A stretch of 63,957 bases of DNA, the filler included, from Intoshia linei (taxonomy: Eukaryota; Animalia; Orthonectida): NCBI GenBank assembly GCA_001642005.1. It is 9 parts of 9 records of this genome, joined end to end, with 100 filler letters (N's around TTAATTAATTAA, not from the genome) between each part and the next. Parts side by side here need not be neighbours in the genome. Positions count along the whole stretch, not along the records: positions 53,928 to 59,055 come from LWCA01001827.1; 8 more parts are not named here. One strand, 5' to 3'. The number at the start of each line of letters is the position of its first letter. The first letter of the stretch is position 1. Shown here in pieces: positions 52,503 through 59,998 of the stretch. The position numbers and the translations under genes were made by a program. The notes beneath the pieces were generated by a model, which had not been told where the DNA came from, did no database searches, and worked only from the letters and a program-made list of their open reading frames with translations.

Positions 52503-54820
52503 TTACTATAGAAGGGATAAATTTTGATTAAAACTCGTACATTATCATCGAAATTCATTATTGACGAGTTAGACTGTATTTTTAACTTAAAAAAATAGGT
52601 ATTAAATTAGAGTGTCCAGATTAAGTGCTAAATGAGTATTTTTCGAAATGTCTCAGAAACAAAAAGAACAATAAAATTTTAATTGAAAGTTCTAACAATT
52701 TGAAATTTAAAATATGAAATGTAAATGTTAATTTTATTGGTATTTATCATTGCAAATTATTTTTTTGCATAATTCACTATGATTTTACAAGGGTTTGTAA
52801 AAATCAATAAACTCTCTTTACAATTATAATTTTTTTTGGCATAATTACAAAATAATTAATTTTTATTAATTAATAAATTTGAAGTGATCCAAATTAAACG
52901 ATATAAAGTGTGTTTGTATAAAATATAAATTTATTAAAACTTCACTTTATTAAAAATGTGAAAAATTACAAGTAAAATATTGACTAAAATTATCTATGGT
53001 ATTTATGAGTACTTATTCCGTACTTATTTTTGACATTTAAAAATAAGTACTTTTGTTAATGTTAATGTAAGTACTTATGGACACTAGGGTGTCACACCCA
53101 TCAAAGAATCAATGGCAATTAGCACTAAAAGTGTGTATTTTTAAAATAAAAAAACTAATTTGCAATCAAAAATATTTAACGCTATCTATTCGAGTTGCGT
53201 TTGTCATTTTAAATATCACTGTATAAATATTATAAAAAAATTTAAACTGAACTTTATTTTAACGGAAATCGGCGTTTGAGCTTTTAAACGTGGTACTGCC
53301 TGTATAATATTGTTCTCCATGTTTAGTTATACAGTTTATTTTTTTGGATTTTATTAACGATTTAATTTCTCGAATTCTGGTTATTTACAATATAATAAAT
53401 TCATTCAAATACAAAACATTCACGATCTTGTTAGTCATGTTTGCAAAAATAAAGTCATGTTTGCAATGAATATGGTCAATACAGAGATTCCATAATATAC
53501 CAAAATTTATTACATATTTTTTGTTAAAATAACTTTTAAGTCATTTTTAAGAAGCAATAGTTAAATTAATCTTTCACAATATATTCGGGAATTTTTTTTT
53601 CATAATAAAATTCTTAATTGCACATTTTTTGATAATTATATTTGAATTTTATTCAATGCATATATGAATTGCATATAATTTAGCAGATATAACCATTTAT
53701 AAGAGTAATTTTATGACAGATTTTAAAGGGAAATTTGAATATTATATCTATTATCTATTACATCTATATCTATATATTATATCTGTTACCAAATTATTGT
53801 GAGGGTTGCCAATATAATTTTAATTTANNNNNNNNNNNNNNNNNNNNNNNNNNNNNNNNNNNNNNNNNNNNTTAATTAATTAANNNNNNNNNNNNNNNNN
53901 NNNNNNNNNNNNNNNNNNNNNNNNNNNCAAAATAGAATTTCATCAATTTAAATTGTTTCATGTGTATTCACAAAATTTTTGTGGCCCGCGACATAATTAT
54001 ACGTGTTCAATGCGGCCCGCATATCAATAAGTTTGCCCACCACTGACCTAGACCCCTCTCAACGGTCCTTGGTATGTGAAAATCGAGTTCAAATAAAAAT
54101 ATTGAAAGATGGAAATTTTTAAATTGATAATAAAATAAATTTCATTTTTTGTATCAGTAGTACCGATTCGGTACTGATTGTAAATTATTACTGTCGATCT
54201 TAAGTGATACAGCTTAGTGATTAACTTTTAATCAAAAATAATCACATGATTCATTAATAAATTTCAAATTAATTTCTTTATGACCAATATGTTACACATA
54301 GTAAGGGCCGTGGAGCGACACCATTTGGTCCTAAGCAGATGGAAATTATAGACTCGTATAAAATTTTTTTAAAAAGGGACATATATACATTGTTTAATCG
54401 ACTGTTTATTGTCTAAAAATTAACAATAACAGTGGAAAATTGCATTGATCATTATAAAATTTCCCAAAATTAGGAAATTTTTCAGCATTACCGATTTACC
54501 ATATTATCTACATTAATTATTATAGTAGGCTTCTCATGATTTTAGTCAGGGTCATGTGGTCCCTTAGCACTTCTCTTATAAAAATATTTGAGGTGCCTAT
54601 TTTTCATTTTCGGATGGACTCGAGCATGGTAGATTCGACTATGATGCATCAATTTGATTGTTAGTTTTTTAAAATTAAAAAAATATAAATGAATTATTAT
54701 AAATATTTTGTGCTCATTTGTGGGAAACGCCATAATGGAATATAATCGTTTTGATTCAATATGAAAAATGTTAACAACTAAATAATCGGATATTTATCCT
54801 TCCTTACTTATATAAAGTAA

Positions 54821-55010
54821 CTAGGTTGACTGTTATGTACTACGTACAAACAGGACCTAGCTCTGCCGAGGGCATATTTTTATTATACCAAAAAAATAAA
54901 TTCAAGTTGCAAATCTATCTTAAAAATCCTACTATTCTCTAGTATCAATCCTTTAAAGGAGTAATTCCCAAATTTGTTTCAGGTGGAACTATCATATAAC
55001 ATTACTTTTT
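54821..55010 (-). mobile_element. Non-autonomous Helitron 3' part
   Basis: a|ctaggttgactgttatgtactacgtacaaacag terminus. Confidence 0.75.
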
Positions 55011-55012
55011 GC

Positions 55013-55600
55013 ATGAATTTGAATTTGAAGAGAAAAAGATTTATAGATAAATGATAAAATAAAATTGATTAAACTGTTTGACGAATATTCAAATCGATCT
55101 CAAAAATATTTAGCCACCAAACACTCAATTTCAGTAGGTTTGATAAATAAGTCGTTAAAAAATCGTGAAGAAATCCTTAATTATAATAATTTAAATTTGA
55201 ATCAGAAGAGAATCAAACAGATTATGTAGTAAAAAAAATAATGACAAATTGATTATCATGAAACTTTTAGAATTTGACGATAGTATTGCACCAAAAATTG
55301 ACTTTAGTTTAAAAATTGACAGACAATTCAGGGTAATTAGGTCTTTTAAATATAGTTCCAAGGTTGTTATTCCGTATTCCATGTTAGGTTTCAATCGGAA
55401 AATAAAATAAATGGAGTCAACTAGATGCAGTGTTACACTTTTGTTCAACTTCAAAATCAGATTACATTACTGAAGTGGGAGCATTTGAAAAGATAATTTT
55501 TTGAAATTATAGAAGATTCGAAGATAGAAGAATGGATGATTCTGACAATAAAAAAATGGTTTTTCTCATTGAACAGCTAAAAATCCTGGTTGGGAAACAC
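55013..55600 (+). pseudogene. Transposase remnants: Tigger/pogo CENP-B-type HTH followed by a possible P/THAP9-like fragment and a hAT TIR
   Basis: KRKDL*INDKIKLIKLFD..SQKYLATKHSISVGLINKSLKNREEIL is psq/CENP-B HTH-like. WSQLDAVL and MVFLIEQLKIL follow, and the region ends ggttgggaaacactg. Confidence 0.5.
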
Positions 55601-56605
55601 TGATCTATGATAATGGCTTTTTTCTTTTGTTTCGGATGACATGACAAAAACAAAATGTTTGCGTAGGTTAGGAAATTGTTTCATGAAAGGGTTATTATCA
55701 GTAAAAACTAGTTACCAAAAAGTTTTAAAAACAACAGAAAGAAGAAAAAGAAAATTTAGCAATTGAGTGGTGGTAATTACGATGAAAAAAAATTTTCCAA
55801 TATATATAATCAAGAAAAAAGAATGAAAATTCAACTATTTGATGTTATTTTATTTTTCATTGTTTTTGTATATTTTATTTTGTGAAATGAAATCAAAATT
55901 TATGATAACTATTCATTTAAACTGAAAATATCAAGTTTTTTCCAATTTGATTGATTAATAATCAATCTAATATCCTAAAATTATTTTTTTGTCAAGTCTT
56001 TCACTTGCCTAATAATCTTAGAGACAAAAAAAATCCCGCCTACAATCTTTTTTACTAGAATGTCTCGTATTCTGTCCTGGTTTAAGCTATCCTTGCCCTA
56101 GTATGCATTGTATACTATACAAGCGCTAAGATAATTTTAAAGTCAAAGATTTATTGTATTAAAAACTGCCTATTAAAAAAGTCCAAAGTAGAAATCTCGA
56201 GACTTTGTAAACATCCCACAGTAAATACATACGAATTAAGATCCTATGTTTGCATAATAAATAATTCTAATGTTACCAATGAGACTGCCGTTGTTCAAAA
56301 GAATCTAGGAGATATAATTTGCAGTATAAAAAAGTTGAAAACATTATTTACATTTGAGAGCGTGTTTATATTTGGAAAAGTTTTACAGCAATCATATAAG
56401 GTATTTCTTTAGATTATAAACGGACAACAGTTCAGTCGTATCTAAACCATAATATCCGATAAAATGTTATCGAGATGTATGTTTTAGGGCTGGTATATAA
56501 CGTTGTATTTACCTTTAATGTAAACCAATAATATCAGAGTTTTAGTAAAAATTGCAATAAATTACGTTTTAACCTTGAATTTCTTATATTCATCAAAAAT
56601 CAAAA

Positions 56606-58122
56606 ATGAACCACAGTAACATTGTCACGTCCATCAAGGAAAAGATGAATCAGTTTAGAATATCTAACGCTGCTTTATCCGACGAGATTAGTGCTCTCAA
56701 GCAAACACTTTCAGAAAATTCTATAAAAATCGAAGAAGTTTGTTTTAAAATTATATATAATTTTCAGCGTTCTACCTGCTTTTGAATATACAAGTATTTT
56801 ATTATACATTTACATTCTGAAGGGTATTTAGAACTAGGATTTTAAAGCAATTTGAAATTTTATAATTGTATTTGTCTAATGTAAATGTTTACATTATTTA
56901 GTATGAAAACAAAGTAGCTACGTTGACCCGTAAAGTTGCTCAATTGGAAGATGAAAATGAGAAATTGGAATTAAATTTTGCTAGTCAAACAGAAAAATTA
57001 AACACTAGTATTCAAATGGCTGATGATAGTGAAAGGTTTTTTTAATTACATCCTGCATGATGCATGAACATTTAGATTAAAAGCGGCCTTATCCCAGCAA
57101 TATAATGCTGAACTTGACGTTAAAGATAAAATTTCTTGTAACGTAAAAAGTTTGGAAGATAAATTGACTGAATTTGAGAATAAATATCGTGAGGTTATTA
57201 TGGATCCTTAAATGTTACGAAAATTACCATACATGTGAAAAAAATTTCTACCCTTGGTGTTTAGTATTTTAAACGTAAACATTTTAGAACACGAAAAGTA
57301 CTTGAAAACCGCACAAGTGCTGATGAAGAGCGAATTGAAAAATTGGAAAAAGAACTGCAAACCTACATGGATAAGAGTTCTGACGCCGATAGAAGTTATG
57401 AAGAGGTTAGGTCGTTTAACATTTGTAGAGATTGAAATTATTTAGACTGCACAAAAATTAGCTATCACTGAAACGGATTTAGAAAAGTCTGAAGGTCGAC
57501 TAGAAAATTTAGAACTGTATTTTACTTAGTTATTATAGGTTTATGAGTTTATGCGGTTATCTTAAAATTACTTACACTGTGGGGTTTATTTATTTGTTAT
57601 TATTTATCGTGTATGGTTTTTTCGAGCATTCAATTGCATGTAATAGTATAATAATATTATCTACTAATAGCTTTCTCAACGATCGGTTCTATTGGAAAGC
57701 ACTACCTCAAAATTAGAAGAAGAAAACCAAAATTTGAACGAGTATGCATGATTTTACTAATATTATTAACCCTTTTTATTATTTTACTAATAGAAAAATT
57801 ACTCAGAAAGATTATGAACTTACTCAAATAACACTTCAAATTAAATCCGAACAACACAACTTGGGCCAGGTTTTAATTTTTATAAACTCATAAACTTGGT
57901 CAAACATTTTACATTTTGTTTTAAGCAAAATTACTGGGTTAGAGGAGGAACTTAGTGTTGTAGGCAACAATATGAAATCTTTAGAAATTAGCGAACAAGA
58001 GGTTAATTGCATGATAATATGCATGGTTTTTTCTTTTATTTTTTCTATTCTGCTTTTAGGCTTCTCAGAGAGAAGATGCACATAAGGAATCTATTCGAGA
58101 ATTGTCTGATAAATTTAAAGAA
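56606..58122 (+). CDS. Tpm: Tropomyosin, short (exon-1b type) isoform, 3' exons not visible; canonical path 56606-56737, 56902-57035, 57288-57405, 57446-57516, 57926-58001, 58060-58122
   Basis: ADDSER|TRKVLENRTSADEERIE, KLAITETDLEKSEGR, KITGLEEELSVVGNNMKSLEISEQE|ASQRED. Exon sizes of 132/134/118/71/76/63 nt are the conserved tropomyosin exon sizes. Confidence 0.93.
57076..57869 (+). CDS. Alternative tropomyosin exons 57076-57193 (118 nt), 57671-57741 (71 nt), 57794-57869 (76 nt)
   Basis: Each is open, AG/GT flanked, and has the same length and phase as the neighbouring canonical exon. Translations are coiled-coil-like. Confidence 0.8.
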
Positions 58123-59998
58123 GTATATTTATTTTTTATTTATTTTCGAAACGCGTGTCTAAATTCACGTCATTTGGGACGCAACGTATAATTACATTTA
58201 GTTTATTTTCAATGTCATTTCTGCAATTTTAGATTATACTTTAATTATAATTGACATTATAATTGCTTTTCTATTATTTAATTACTCCATTTGCAGGTTT
58301 TGCAGTTAAAGTTAAGTTTTTTGATTTTTTAGATATATTTATTAATTTGAAGCACATGTACAATGTCACGTTTTTAAAAACGCAGACAATCTGGGAACGA
58401 TAACATGAGCTATAACTAGGTGTAACTTTAATAAATTAAATAAGGTTTCAGATTTAAATTAGTCGATTGCAATGTACAATTAATATTCAACTTCATGACT
58501 GGCCCAATATAAAAATAACTTCATATACGGTATATCAAGGCATTATGGGTTCATCCCGGATTAATATATTCAGAAATAATTTAATTTTGACGCGCATACA
58601 AGAACAAGTCTAGAGATAAACATGAATGATTTATATAATATGGAAGGTGATTTTAAACATATACATTTGGTTTTTACTAAAGGACAATGTATTGTATTTA
58701 CGCGTACGTACGTAACATGTACGTTTAAAAATAAGTTAAAGTTGAAAATTGAAAAATTTATAAGAAAATTTTAATTTTAAGTAATTTACAGTATACATAA
58801 TGTGTATTTGAATAACACTGCCCAACACCAAAAACATGCAAGGATGATGAATACATCATCTTTTTCGTCTCAATGAACTGGTCAACGCTATAACAATATT
58901 ATTTTTCAATCACGTCCAGATTTTTTTTTAATTGACGGTAAAGTTACAAAAATGTCAAAAATAGGGGGTTTTCAAAGCCATCTTAAACACAATTAGAAAC
59001 ACCAACTATGTATTTTATGTAGCATCATACATATATAATATATTAATTAATGTCANNNNNNNNNNNNNNNNNNNNNNNNNNNNNNNNNNNNNNNNNNNNT
59101 TAATTAATTAANNNNNNNNNNNNNNNNNNNNNNNNNNNNNNNNNNNNNNNNNNNNCAAGCAGGTCATTTTAGTTAATTTTAAAAACGACATAGTGAATAT
59201 ATTGCTTAAAAGCAACGAATTTTCACTACGCGCAGTTAAAATTTAGATGTGTGTGGCACCCTAGTGTACATTGTACACATTTTACATTGTACAACTGTAA
59301 AATGTACACATTCCACAGTTATCCAATTATTGACTGATGGGATGGGTGTAGTAATAAGAAGAGTCGTGAGTACTAACTATGGGTCAAATAAAAATTAAAA
59401 AAAATTGGTTACTCTAGCCATAGTTTAACTTTACAAGTGTTATCCTGTTAGATTAAAAAAATATAAAAAATTTTTTCTAACCGCATTTGTTAATTTAGAA
59501 TATTAGGTCCATCATATAATACTATCCCTCCCAGTCAGCGATCTTTGTAATAATGATAAATATTGAACTGTAGTTTTTACATAAGTCTATATTGTATAAT
59601 TTAGCTAACTAACGGATTTGTCGTAGTTCTAAGCACTGATTTTACAATGATTTATGTGTCTGAAACTGTTTCTACATATTTAGGCCAATCTCAGGTTATT
59701 AATACTTTTAATTTCAAAATGTTCCAAATTGTTAACGTTTGACTTGAATTAATGTCCTTTTTATCTAAAATAAAATTATTTAATATTACTTTGATACCTT
59801 TAAATATGCCAAAATTGGAAATAGACCACATCGATTTGATATAAATTGATTTATTGTTAAAAAAATTCATGTCCACAAAATTGTTTTATATCAGTTTGAT
59901 AAAAAATGAATTAATTTTTGTGAGACTCAAACGATACATTTTACTGGCTTAATAAATAGTTATAGTTATGATTTTTTATTAGTATATTGTTTAAATAA

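What the first reader, a model, noticed from the sequence alone, without database searches (positions are those of the whole stretch)
57076..58001. Three consecutive duplicated exon pairs in tropomyosin encode a hidden, divergent isoform set
Seen: exons 4, 5 and 6 each occur twice with identical size and phase. The pairs are 57076-57193 / 57288-57405 (118 nt), 57446-57516 / 57671-57741 (71 nt) and 57794-57869 / 57926-58001 (76 nt). The order is divergent-canonical, canonical-divergent, divergent-canonical. Divergent exons read LKAALSQQYNAELDVKDKISCNVKSLEDKLTEFENKYRE, LSQRSVLLESTTSKLEEENQNLN and KITQKDYELTQITLQIKSEQHNLGQ, all stop-free. Including both members of any one pair shifts the frame. 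Known: tropomyosins use mutually exclusive exons (vertebrate exons 2 and 6). Inference: a block of three consecutive exclusive pairs gives up to 8 combinations, or two co-ordinated isoforms that swap ~88 central residues of actin/myosin-contact periods. Exact length conservation despite low identity implies selection. The intra-pair spacers are 94, 154 and 56 nt, not shorter than normal introns here, so exclusion is probably not simply steric.
Basis: partly seen in the sequence, partly recalled or inferred. Interest (0 to 1): 0.85.

Follow-up and report, generated by a model that had tools for sequence, protein, structure and literature searches.

The report
Paired alternative exons in orthonectid tropomyosin
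The tropomyosin gene of the tiny parasite Intoshia linei carries exons 4, 5 and 6 in duplicate and splices them as two fixed sets (one conserved, one very divergent); relatives share the layout, so it is real but not a new kind of thing.

Summary
The piece is the 5128-bp Intoshia linei contig that carries tropomyosin (OAF64448.1). Exons 4, 5 and 6 each occur twice at the stated coordinates, with equal length, phase and AG/GT borders.

Spliced contigs from three public runs show only two linkage sets. One is 3-4b-5a-6b (canonical) and the other is 3-4a-5b-6a (divergent).

The divergent set keeps the tropomyosin heptad register. It has lost recognisable tropomyosin sequence and much of its negative charge. 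The deposited gene model is wrong: it strings 4a and 4b together and omits 5b and 6a.

The architecture is not new. Gene models from Hymenolepis and Batillaria (Paragonimus in part) hold the same pairs in the same order (divergent-canonical, canonical-divergent, divergent-canonical). Octopus isoforms use alternative exons 4, 5 and 6, though their genomic order was not seen. This fits the published picture of tandem exon duplication in tropomyosin.

Two mechanistic leads are new and inferred only. First, intron complementarities bracket exactly the skipped exon blocks and are predicted to form alternately. Second, six sense-strand TGCATG (Fox-type) motifs cluster beside 4a, 5b and 6b.

Verdict: a new member of a known kind, of modest interest.

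The parts
55555..56400 (+). Non-coding first exon (5' UTR) of the short-form transcript. The upstream end is only a lower bound taken from contig ends.
   Evidence: Contigs 55555/55874/56043-56398 are joined to 56544-56737 in all three runs. The joint is GT..AG with the cut 2 nt to the right.
56401..56545 (+). 5' UTR intron (145 nt).
   Evidence: Joint 56398>56544 (cut +2) in X1, X2 and X3. GT and AG are read.
56546..56737 (+). Exon 1b type. ATG at 56606, 44 codons, short-form N-terminus.
   Evidence: ORF, translation, joint 56737>56902 in all runs. Weakly similar to the N-termini of short-form Paragonimus tropomyosins.
56902..57035 (+). Constitutive exon 3 (134 nt). It also receives an off-contig upstream exon 2.
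   Evidence: Pfam tropomyosin E 1.4e-4. Joints to 4a and to 4b, plus a loose end before 56902 in all runs. The loose-end sequence is not in the piece.
57036..57075 (+). 40-nt intron upstream of 4a with two TGCATG motifs (57054, 57061).
57076..57193 (+). Exon 4a, divergent copy (118 nt).
   Evidence: 3>4a in X2; 4a>5b in X1 and X2. No Pfam or PDB tropomyosin hit. Heptad register kept.
57194..57287 (+). Spacer B between 4a and 4b. Predicted 5' arm of the long-range pairing with spacer D.
   Evidence: RNAduplex B::D -45.9 kcal/mol, z -4.9 against 300 shuffles. None of 700 natural partners did as well. Core helices have pairing probability 0.94-0.99.
57288..57405 (+). Exon 4b, canonical copy (118 nt).
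   Evidence: Pfam tropomyosin E 1.6e-6. PDB tropomyosin residues 128-164. 60% identical to flatworm tropomyosins. Joints 3>4b and 4b>5a in all runs.
57446..57516 (+). Exon 5a, canonical copy (71 nt).
   Evidence: 59-68% identical to flatworm and Octopus exon 5. Joints 4b>5a and 5a>6b in all runs.
57517..57670 (+). Spacer D between 5a and 5b. It holds the arm for F (57529-57559), the arm for B (57547-57646) and one TGCATG at 57635.
   Evidence: (I1, I4, I8).
57671..57741 (+). Exon 5b, divergent copy (71 nt). Its 5' splice site overlaps a TGCATG at 57745.
   Evidence: (4a>5b, 5b>6a).
57794..57869 (+). Exon 6a, divergent copy (76 nt).
   Evidence: 5b>6a in X1 and X2. Heptad register kept.
57870..57925 (+). 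Spacer F between 6a and 6b. Its arm 57874-57905 pairs with D, including an 18-bp helix with 14 perfect Watson-Crick pairs.
   Evidence: the repeat finder I4. Duplex z -4.1. 14-mer null 0/3000. The helix is present in both the MFE and the centroid of the 5a>6b intron.
57926..58001 (+). Exon 6b, canonical copy (76 nt).
   Evidence: Pfam tropomyosin E 1.3e-5. 84-88% identical to flatworm and Octopus exon 6. Joint 5a>6b in all runs.
58002..58059 (+). Intron between 6b and exon 7 with two TGCATG motifs (58008, 58020).
   Evidence: Joints into exon 7 were dropped by the repeat filter at 58026-58054.
58060..58122 (+). Constitutive exon 7 (63 nt). It continues to an exon 8 that lies off the contig.
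   Evidence: 50-57% identical to flatworm and Octopus exon 7. Loose end behind 58122 in all runs, and that sequence is absent from the piece.

Best explanation
This is the single-contig part of the Intoshia linei (Orthonectida) tropomyosin gene. It keeps the ancestral 134/118/71/76/63-nt exon layout. Exons 4, 5 and 6 are each tandemly duplicated, in the order divergent-canonical, canonical-divergent, divergent-canonical.

Shown: transcripts use the copies in a mutually exclusive way and as two linked sets. The 4b-5a-6b set is conserved and tropomyosin-like. The 4a-5b-6a set has the same length, phase and heptad register, but is unrecognisable by sequence and much less acidic (net charge -3 against -11). 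The two products are therefore equal-length coiled coils that differ in about 88 central residues, that is, in the actin-facing surface of roughly two actin-binding periods.

Shown: the layout puts 4b next to 5a (40-nt intron) and 5b next to 6a (52-nt intron). Only four exon-skipping choices are therefore needed.

Inferred: one regulated choice at exon 4 is passed downstream. If 4a is used, spacer B stays in the pre-mRNA and pairs with spacer D. This loops out 4b-5a and brings the 4a donor close to the 5b acceptor. If 4b is used, B is removed, D pairs with spacer F instead, and 5b-6a is looped out so that 5a joins 6b. Six sense-strand UGCAUG motifs sit upstream of 4a, upstream of 5b, on the 5b donor and downstream of 6b. 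They suggest that a Fox/RBFOX-type factor pushes the gene to the canonical, probably muscle-type, set, with the divergent set as the default.

The three-pair layout itself is inherited from an older lophotrochozoan tropomyosin gene.
For: Identity: exon 4a matches OAF64448.1 / A0A177AR28 of Intoshia linei at 100%, on a contig of 5128 bp.

Exon anatomy and frames.

Use and linkage: GT..AG joints 3>4a, 4a>5b and 5b>6a on one side, and 3>4b, 4b>5a and 5a>6b on the other, with no mixed joints. Contig k-mer depths for the divergent and canonical sets are 482 and 1140 (X1), 1909 and 688 (X2), and 0 and 1099 (X3). The ratio is therefore sample-dependent.

Coiled coil: 17 of 25 core a/d positions are hydrophobic in the tropomyosin register for both sets, the best of seven registers.

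Conservation asymmetry: 4b, 5a and 6b are 60%, 59-68% and 84-88% identical to flatworm and Octopus exons. The divergent exons score near noise.

Shared architecture: collinear blocks run 4D-4C, 5C-5D, 6D-6C in Hymenolepis models P0005 and P0013 and in Batillaria P0053. Paragonimus P0004 shows 5C-6D-6C. Octopus isoforms carry three alternative exon 4s, two exon 5s and two exon 6s.

RNA pairing: of 21 spacer or intron pairs, only B::D (z -4.9) and D::F (z -4.1) stand out, and each brackets an observed skipped block. Natural-sequence nulls: 0/700 for B::D and 0/3000 for the 14-nt perfect D:F match. Conditional folds: with B present, B::D has probability 0.94-0.99 and D::F below 0.01. With B spliced out, D::F has probability 0.87. 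Both stems appear in the MFE and centroid of the respective introns.

Motif: TGCATG occurs 6 times in 494 intron nt. The shuffle mean is 0.08 and the maximum is 3 in 20000 shuffles. The reverse complement occurs 0 times. RBFOX2 represses rat Tpm1 exon 6a in favour of 6b (PMC8419188).
Against: The runs are Logan contigs of unknown library type. Contigs drop rare variants, so low-level mixed isoforms cannot be excluded, and depths are only rough.

Joints into exon 7 were filtered out, so 6a>7 and 6b>7 were not seen directly.

The RNA relay rests on thermodynamic prediction for one species. No relative was available for covariation. Whole-intron MFE z-scores are unremarkable (-1.1 and -1.6). D pairs fairly well with 12% of natural 56-mers by energy alone. 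The two arms in D overlap by only 7 nt. Skipping of 4a and of 6b has no structural support (A::B and F::G are not significant; the hairpin idea was rejected).

Whether I. linei has an RBFOX gene was not tested.

Orthology of the divergent exons with those of other phyla rests on order alone, because the sequence signal is inconclusive. The genomic loci of the other species could not be fetched.
Confidence: 0.75

Rival explanations
1. The three choices are made independently, giving up to eight isoforms. The two linked sets are simply the most abundant ones that the assembler kept.
For: All eight single-choice combinations are in frame. Annotated Octopus isoforms mix exon 4, 5 and 6 variants. 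Logan contigs drop rare variants.
Against: Exons 4b/5a and 5b/6a are separated only by 40- and 52-nt introns, which favours joint use.
Confidence: 0.1
2. Co-ordination follows the published tropomyosin rule. [quoted passage not shown]
For: [quoted passage not shown] This gene has both a 1b exon and an off-contig exon 2 that joins exon 3. In X2 the 1b depth (680) nearly equals the canonical depth (688).
Against: In X3 the canonical set (1099) far exceeds 1b (98.5), so the canonical set is also used with the other 5' end. In X1 and X2 the divergent set (482 and 1909) exceeds 1b (139 and 680), so it is not tied to 1b. At most the divergent set is limited to non-1b transcripts, and the canonical set is used with both 5' ends. 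Depths are rough.
Confidence: 0.2
3. Co-ordination is set only by trans-acting splicing factors that act on each pair (for example a Fox-type protein). The intron complementarities are fortuitous.
For: The TGCATG cluster lies beside 4a, 5b and 6b. There is a precedent in RBFOX2 control of Tpm1 exons 6a/6b. Whole-intron folding energies are not unusual.
Against: The two most significant of 21 segment pairings are exactly those that bracket the two skipped double-exon blocks. The chance of that is about 0.03, on top of their individual p-values.
Confidence: 0.3
4. The divergent cassette is a decaying, functionless splice variant (noise or a non-productive isoform).
For: It has no recognisable tropomyosin sequence. 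It is absent from run X3. A precedent exists in C. elegans lev-11 exon 7c, which is only 17-19% identical to its partners and gives poor actin binding (PMC10512467).
Against: All three exons are stop-free in a genome where about 9% of random codons are stops. Length, phase and splice sites are exactly kept. The heptad core is as good as in the canonical set. In X2 it is the most abundant form.
Confidence: 0.07

Closest known systems
Tandemly duplicated, mutually exclusive exon sets of bilaterian tropomyosin genes (Irimia et al. 2010, Mol Biol Evol 27:1504, as summarised in PMC3342872)
   Same: Internal tropomyosin exons are tandemly duplicated with the same size and phase. They are used in a mutually exclusive way, and the alternative exons are linked along the gene.
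   Different: Here the link to the two promoters is not simple. One set has diverged beyond recognition while its partner stays 60-88% identical to other phyla. The original paper was not held, so its details come from the review and from my own memory.
Tropomyosin genes of Hymenolepis (P0005, P0013, P0016), Paragonimus (P0004), Batillaria (P0053) and Octopus (P0007, P0017-P0025)
   Same: Hymenolepis and Batillaria show the same three pairs in the same genomic order: 4 divergent then canonical, 5 canonical then divergent, 6 divergent then canonical. Paragonimus shows 5C-6D-6C. Octopus isoforms carry alternative exons 4, 5 and 6, but their genomic order was not seen.
   Different: Their second copies are still clearly tropomyosin-like, with BLOSUM scores of mostly 41-76 against Intoshia canonical exons (Octopus 5D and Paragonimus 6D score only 15 and 23), compared with 20-33 for Intoshia's own divergent copies. 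Molluscs have a third exon 4. Annotated Octopus isoforms mix the variants. The evidence is from proteins only, because the loci could not be fetched.
Vertebrate TPM1-3 exons 6a/6b and their control by RBFOX2 and PTBP1
   Same: The 76-nt exon 6 pair has the less conserved copy upstream. (U)GCAUG-binding RBFOX2 favours 6b over 6a in rat Tpm1 (PMC8419188). Intoshia has two TGCATG motifs just downstream of 6b.
   Different: In vertebrates exons 4 and 5 are single. Regulation by a Fox protein in Intoshia is only inferred from motifs.
C. elegans lev-11 tropomyosin, with alternative exons including the very divergent exon 7c
   Same: One tropomyosin gene has two promoters and several mutually exclusive exon sets. 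It includes a 'hidden' exon only 17-19% identical to its partners, which changes actin binding (PMC10512467).
   Different: The nematode exon boundaries differ. E7c is rare (about 1/5000 of junctions) and is predicted to disfavour the coiled coil. The Intoshia divergent set is abundant and keeps the heptad core.
Mutually exclusive splicing by competing intronic RNA pairings (Dscam1, 14-3-3zeta, Mhc, ATE1; review PMC9013439)
   Same: Intronic complementary arms bracket the exons to be skipped, and the alternative pairings are predicted to exclude one another.
   Different: Here a single middle spacer (D) would pair either upstream (B) or downstream (F). It would thereby couple three exon clusters rather than choose within one cluster. 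There is no conservation or mutational evidence.

Membership tests
Tropomyosin (Pfam PF00261) | Sequence match to the family profile | tested here: met
   Exons 3, 4b and 6b hit PF00261 at the cognate profile positions (E 1.4e-4, 1.6e-6 and 1.3e-5). Each is below the whole-protein cut-off because it is a single exon. The deposited protein P0001 carries PF00261. Exon 4b aligns to residues 128-164 of solved tropomyosins.
Tropomyosin (Pfam PF00261) | Unbroken heptad coiled coil in a constant register | tested here: met
   Both cassettes have 17 of 25 a/d positions hydrophobic in the register carried over from 284-residue numbering, the best of seven registers. Only the exon 4-6 region was tested.
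Tropomyosin (Pfam PF00261) | Full length of about 248 or 284 residues with head-to-tail overlap ends | not testable with these tools
   Exons 1a/2 and 8/9 lie off the 5128-bp contig.
Mutually exclusive tandem exon sets of tropomyosin | Copies have equal length and phase, and are adjacent | tested here: met
   118/118, 71/71 and 76/76 nt, with AG/GT borders.
Mutually exclusive tandem exon sets of tropomyosin | Copies are homologous | tested here: met
   In-register BLOSUM scores are 33, 25 and 20, against shuffle means of -16, -6 and -13 (p <= 0.002). The signal is weak, and part of it may reflect the shared heptad pattern.
Mutually exclusive tandem exon sets of tropomyosin | Exactly one copy per transcript | tested here: met
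   Only exclusive joints were assembled in three runs. Double inclusion or skipping of exon 4 or 5 gives stop codons. Rare forms cannot be excluded with contigs.
Mutually exclusive tandem exon sets of tropomyosin | Alternative exons are linked to each other along the gene | tested here: met
   Joints 4a>5b>6a and 4b>5a>6b only.
Mutually exclusive tandem exon sets of tropomyosin | [quoted passage not shown] | tested here: inconclusive
   Depth arithmetic argues against a one-to-one link. Contigs break at exon 3, so no molecule spans both the promoter and the cassette.
Competing-RNA-structure control of exclusive exons | Complementary intron arms flank the skipped exons | tested here: met
   B::D and D::F are the only two of 21 pairs beyond shuffles. 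This holds for two of the four skips only.
Competing-RNA-structure control of exclusive exons | The pairings exclude each other | tested here: inconclusive
   Predicted pairing probabilities switch with the presence of B, but the direct overlap is only 7 nt. This is in silico only.
Competing-RNA-structure control of exclusive exons | Conservation or covariation of the arms, and a mutational effect | not testable with these tools
RBFOX/Fox-1-regulated exons | (U)GCAUG clustered in introns next to the regulated exons, on the sense strand | tested here: met
   6 in 494 nt against 0.08 expected. None of 20000 shuffles had more than 3. The antisense count is 0.
RBFOX/Fox-1-regulated exons | A Fox-family RRM protein is encoded by the organism | not tested

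The most novel reading that the evidence does not exclude
A single middle spacer (D, 57517-57670) acts as a two-way docking site. It pairs upstream with spacer B when exon 4a has been chosen, or downstream with spacer F once B has been spliced out with 4a. The exon-4 decision is thereby relayed structurally to exons 5 and 6. Three mutually exclusive clusters then behave as one switch, biased by a Fox-type factor through six UGCAUG sites. The same D-C / C-D / D-C exon order is kept in cestodes and gastropods, so such a relay could explain why that order is conserved.
Probability: 0.25. Interest if true: 0.65.

Novelty: new member of a known kind. Interest (0 to 1): 0.35.

Why it matters
The finding corrects a wrong public gene model. 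It also shows that one of the most reduced bilaterian genomes (I. linei lacks troponins, PMC6543705) still keeps two tropomyosin cores in one gene. One core is conserved and the other evolves fast, and their ratio differs between samples.

How distant alternative regions of one gene are co-ordinated is a question that papers on Tpm1 still call unclear (PMC8419188). If the predicted structural relay is real, this gene offers a compact test case: about 1 kb, with introns of 40-480 nt. The shared exon order with flatworms and molluscs also bears on whether these duplications are old or recurrent.

Tried and rejected
Exon sizes and intron features in those species remain unchecked.

2. Literature. 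Irimia et al. 2010 is not held. No paper describing flatworm exon pairs was found in the library.

3. Spread of the flatworm divergent 5'-6' block. The search returned only Hymenolepis models.

4. Orthology of Intoshia divergent exons with divergent exons of other phyla. Scores of 1-27 give at most a mild preference for exons 4 and 5 and none for exon 6.

5. First natural-sequence null for the duplex energies. It was flawed because both strands of the same DNA were in the pool, so perfect duplexes arose. I relied instead on the one-real-partner nulls and on the plus-strand-only test.

6. A hairpin in spacer F masking the 6b acceptor. Its pairing probability was 0.00 in every context. Splice-site accessibility changed little, except that the 5a donor rose from 0.25 to 0.49 after the 3>4b splice.

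7. A::B and F::G complementarity, which would loop out 4a or 6b. Neither is significant.

8. Whole-intron folding energies. z = -1.1, -1.6, -0.95 and +0.6, none unusual.

9. Rfam and tRNA scans of the piece found nothing.

10. Exon 8 and exon 2 sequences taken from loose ends are not in the piece.

11. Joined spliced models. All searches were exon by exon, by reference. Exon blocks were joined only in memory inside scripts, to count stop codons and to fold post-splicing intermediates.
Full report
**What is there**

The piece (53928-59055) is AT-rich, at about 27% G+C. It carries one recognisable gene, on the + strand.
- 4a 57076-57193 and 4b 57288-57405, 118 nt each
- 5a 57446-57516 and 5b 57671-57741, 71 nt each
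- 6a 57794-57869 and 6b 57926-58001, 76 nt each

Every copy has AG before it and GT after it, and every copy is open in the frame handed on by the preceding exon. The flanking exons are:
- a 44-codon first coding exon, with ATG at 56606 and its end at 56737
- a 134-nt exon 3, 56902-57035
- a 63-nt exon 7, 58060-58122

The series 134/118/71/76/63 is the classical tropomyosin exon 3-7 layout. That statement rests on my own knowledge of vertebrate TPM genes. Here it is supported by the PDB alignment of exon 4b to residues 128-164.

Pfam tropomyosin matches exons 3, 4b and 6b at the cognate profile positions. It does not match 4a, 5b or 6a. Exon 4a finds no tropomyosin among solved structures either. 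Within each pair, identity is only 18-28%. The in-register score still beats composition shuffles, with p <= 0.002.

**Whose gene it is**

An exhaustive HMMER search with exon 4a against 1.84 billion representative proteins found one true match. It is 100% identical over residues 90-128 of a 275-residue protein. That protein is OAF64448.1 / A0A177AR28, 'hypothetical protein A3Q56_07842' of Intoshia linei, on a contig of 5128 bp. This is exactly the length of the piece. The organism belongs to the Orthonectida, within Lophotrochozoa.

The deposited model is wrong:
- It runs 4a into 4b through an invented seven-residue link.
- It continues with 5a and 6b.
- It reads through part of the 6b-7 intron and into intron 7.
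- It omits 5b and 6a.

**Are the divergent exons used?**

Three public runs from one 2024 study hold the locus. They are kept as Logan contigs, and their library type is not on record. They behave as cDNA. Exon contigs have k-mer depths of hundreds to thousands, against 14-75 for the flanks, and they carry GT..AG joints.

- 3>4a (X2)
- 3>4b (all three runs)
- 4a>5b (X1, X2)
- 4b>5a (all)
- 5a>6b (all)
- 5b>6a (X1, X2)

Joints into exon 7 were dropped by the tool's repeat filter at 58026-58054, so 6a>7 and 6b>7 are inferred, not seen.

Depths for the divergent and canonical sets are 482 and 1140 in X1, 1909 and 688 in X2, and 0 and 1099 in X3. The ratio therefore changes between samples. The sample labels are coded, so I cannot tell the stage or sex.

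Further joints show a 145-nt intron in the 5' UTR (56401-56545). Loose ends show an upstream exon 2 that joins exon 3, and a downstream exon 8. Neither sequence is in the piece. The gene therefore runs over both contig ends and has two 5' ends.

**What the two products look like**

Double inclusion or skipping of exon 4 or exon 5 gives early stop codons. All eight single-choice combinations remain open. Frame alone therefore enforces 'one of each pair' but not the observed linkage.

When each exon is placed in the 284-residue tropomyosin numbering, both sets have 17 of 25 a/d core positions hydrophobic. This is the best of the seven possible registers. The divergent set has as many bulky core residues as the canonical one. 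Its net charge is -3 against -11.

Tropomyosin binds actin largely through charge (established knowledge). An acidic-to-neutral change over about 88 residues should therefore alter actin affinity, position on the filament, or partner binding. I. linei is reported to have smooth-type muscle and no troponins (PMC6543705).

**Comparison with other animals**

The nearest proteins to the deposited model are flatworm and Octopus tropomyosins, at 33-40% overall identity. No other orthonectid was found. Exon by exon, 4b, 5a, 6b and 7 are 60%, 59-68%, 84-88% and 50-57% identical to these proteins. The divergent exons score at noise level.

Several of these gene models are over-long because, like the Intoshia model, they string alternative copies together. 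A gene model is collinear with its genome, so these models reveal the exon order:
- Hymenolepis weldensis P0005 reads exon 3, a divergent 4, the canonical 4, a divergent 5, a divergent 6, then the canonical 6.
- H. microstoma P0013 reads canonical 4, canonical 5, divergent 5, divergent 6, canonical 6.
- Paragonimus P0004 reads canonical 5, divergent 6, canonical 6.
- The gastropod Batillaria P0053 reads divergent 4, two canonical-type 4s, canonical 5, divergent 5, divergent 6, canonical 6.
- Annotated Octopus isoforms use three alternative exon 4s, two exon 5s and two exon 6s, in several combinations. Their genomic order was not seen.

The order divergent-canonical, canonical-divergent, divergent-canonical is thus shared by an orthonectid, cestodes and a gastropod, and a trematode model shows the exon 5-6 part of it. 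By chance alone, each further lineage would match all three orientations with probability 1/8.

The Intoshia divergent exons could not be shown to be orthologous to the divergent copies elsewhere. They are much more derived than those copies. Most of the copies elsewhere still score 41-76 against the Intoshia canonical exons, while Octopus 5D and Paragonimus 6D score 15 and 23.

[quoted passage not shown] The kind of feature is therefore known.

**How the linkage could work**

Shown: the layout puts 4b beside 5a (40-nt intron) and 5b beside 6a (52-nt intron). The gene is effectively [4a][4b-5a][5b-6a][6b], and four skips must be controlled.

Promoter coupling does not explain the data in a simple way. 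In X3 the canonical set far exceeds exon 1b (1099 against 98.5). In X1 and X2 the divergent set exceeds exon 1b. The canonical set is therefore used with both 5' ends. The divergent set is used mostly or only with the non-1b end. These depth figures are rough.

Inferred, lead 1: RNA pairing.
- I computed RNA duplex energies for all 21 pairs of the seven introns and spacers, each with 300 dinucleotide shuffles. Only two pairs stood out: spacer B (4a-4b) with spacer D (5a-5b), -45.9 kcal/mol, z -4.9; and D with spacer F (6a-6b), -22.6 kcal/mol, z -4.1.
- B::D spans nearly the whole of B and about 100 nt of D. It brackets 4b-5a, the block skipped in the 4a>5b splice.
- D::F contains an 18-bp helix with 14 perfect pairs. 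It brackets 5b-6a, the block skipped in the 5a>6b splice.
- Natural-sequence controls agree. None of 700 random genomic partners matched B::D. None of 3000 gave a 14-nt perfect match to D or to F.
- In whole-region folds, the B::D core has pairing probability 0.94-0.99 and D::F below 0.01 as long as B is present. When B is removed, as after a 3>4b splice, D::F rises to 0.87 and enters the MFE.
- Both stems close the respective introns in both the MFE and the centroid. The introns for the other two skips show no such closure.
- This suggests a relay in which the exon-4 choice decides which partner D takes, and thereby which downstream block is looped out.

Inferred, lead 2: a sequence motif.
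- TGCATG occurs six times in the 494 nt of these introns. The shuffle mean is 0.08 and no shuffle in 20000 exceeded 3. It is never present as the reverse complement. It occurs once in the other 4.1 kb of the piece.
- The sites lie upstream of 4a (two), upstream of 5b (one), on the 5b donor (one) and downstream of 6b (two).
- By the usual position rule for Fox/RBFOX proteins, binding upstream represses an exon and binding downstream activates it (my own knowledge). Under that rule, all six sites would favour the canonical set.
- In the rat, RBFOX2 represses Tpm1 exon 6a in favour of 6b (PMC8419188).

**Caveats**

- The structural model rests on one sequence and on thermodynamic prediction.
- Overall intron folding energies are not unusual.
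- The direct overlap of the two arms in D is 7 nt.
- D pairs by energy alone with 12% of natural 56-mers.
- Skipping of 4a and of 6b has no structural support.
- The presence of a Fox gene in I. linei was not tested.
- The reads are contigs, so minor isoforms can be missed.
Exon blocks were joined only inside scripts, for frame counts and for folds of splicing intermediates.

**Verdict**

The feature is a lineage-specific, unusually divergent instance of a known tropomyosin architecture, shared at least with flatworms and molluscs.

Interest is modest at 0.35. The relay hypothesis, if borne out, would deserve more.

Noticed in passing
window 54783-55010: A short stretch has contig k-mer depth up to about 19000, against about 30 for its flanks. 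Dozens of different contigs diverge at 54820 (before) and at 54851, 54870 and 55010 (behind). It looks like a dispersed, high-copy or highly transcribed repeat. It has no Rfam or tRNA match.
   Followed up: partly
window 56606-58191 (deposited model OAF64448.1 = P0001): The public gene model is mis-built. It includes both 4a and 4b through an invented mini-exon, retains part of the 6b-7 intron, reads into intron 7 and omits 5b and 6a. Several flatworm and gastropod tropomyosin models (P0004, P0005, P0012, P0013, P0053) show the same type of error.
   Followed up: yes
window 56902 and 58122 (contig loose ends): Transcripts join exon 3 to an upstream exon 2, and join exon 7 to an exon 8. Both lie outside this 5128-bp contig, so the gene is split over at least two or three contigs of the assembly.
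   Followed up: partly
window 57659-57670 and 57748-57793: The two divergent exons 5b and 6a share an acceptor context ending in ACTAATAG. The 52-nt intron between them holds a 15-nt direct repeat (57748-57762 and 57778-57792) that carries a branch-point-like TACTAAT.
   Followed up: no
window 58008-58025: The two TGCATG copies downstream of 6b can pair with each other as a small hairpin, which is the only element in the centroid fold of the 6a>7 intron. They might therefore act as structure rather than as protein-binding sites.
   Followed up: no
runs X1-X3 over window 57076-58001: Run X3 has no contig for 4a, 5b or 6a, although the canonical set is deep there. Run X2, which is labelled as a different organism but has identical exons and a few intergenic differences, has the divergent set as the major form. 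This hints at stage-, sex- or host-phase-specific use.
   Followed up: partly
window 55555-56400: The short-form transcript seems to have a 5' UTR exon of at least about 850 nt before a 145-nt UTR intron. This is long for such a compact genome, and it may instead reflect overlap with another transcript.
   Followed up: no
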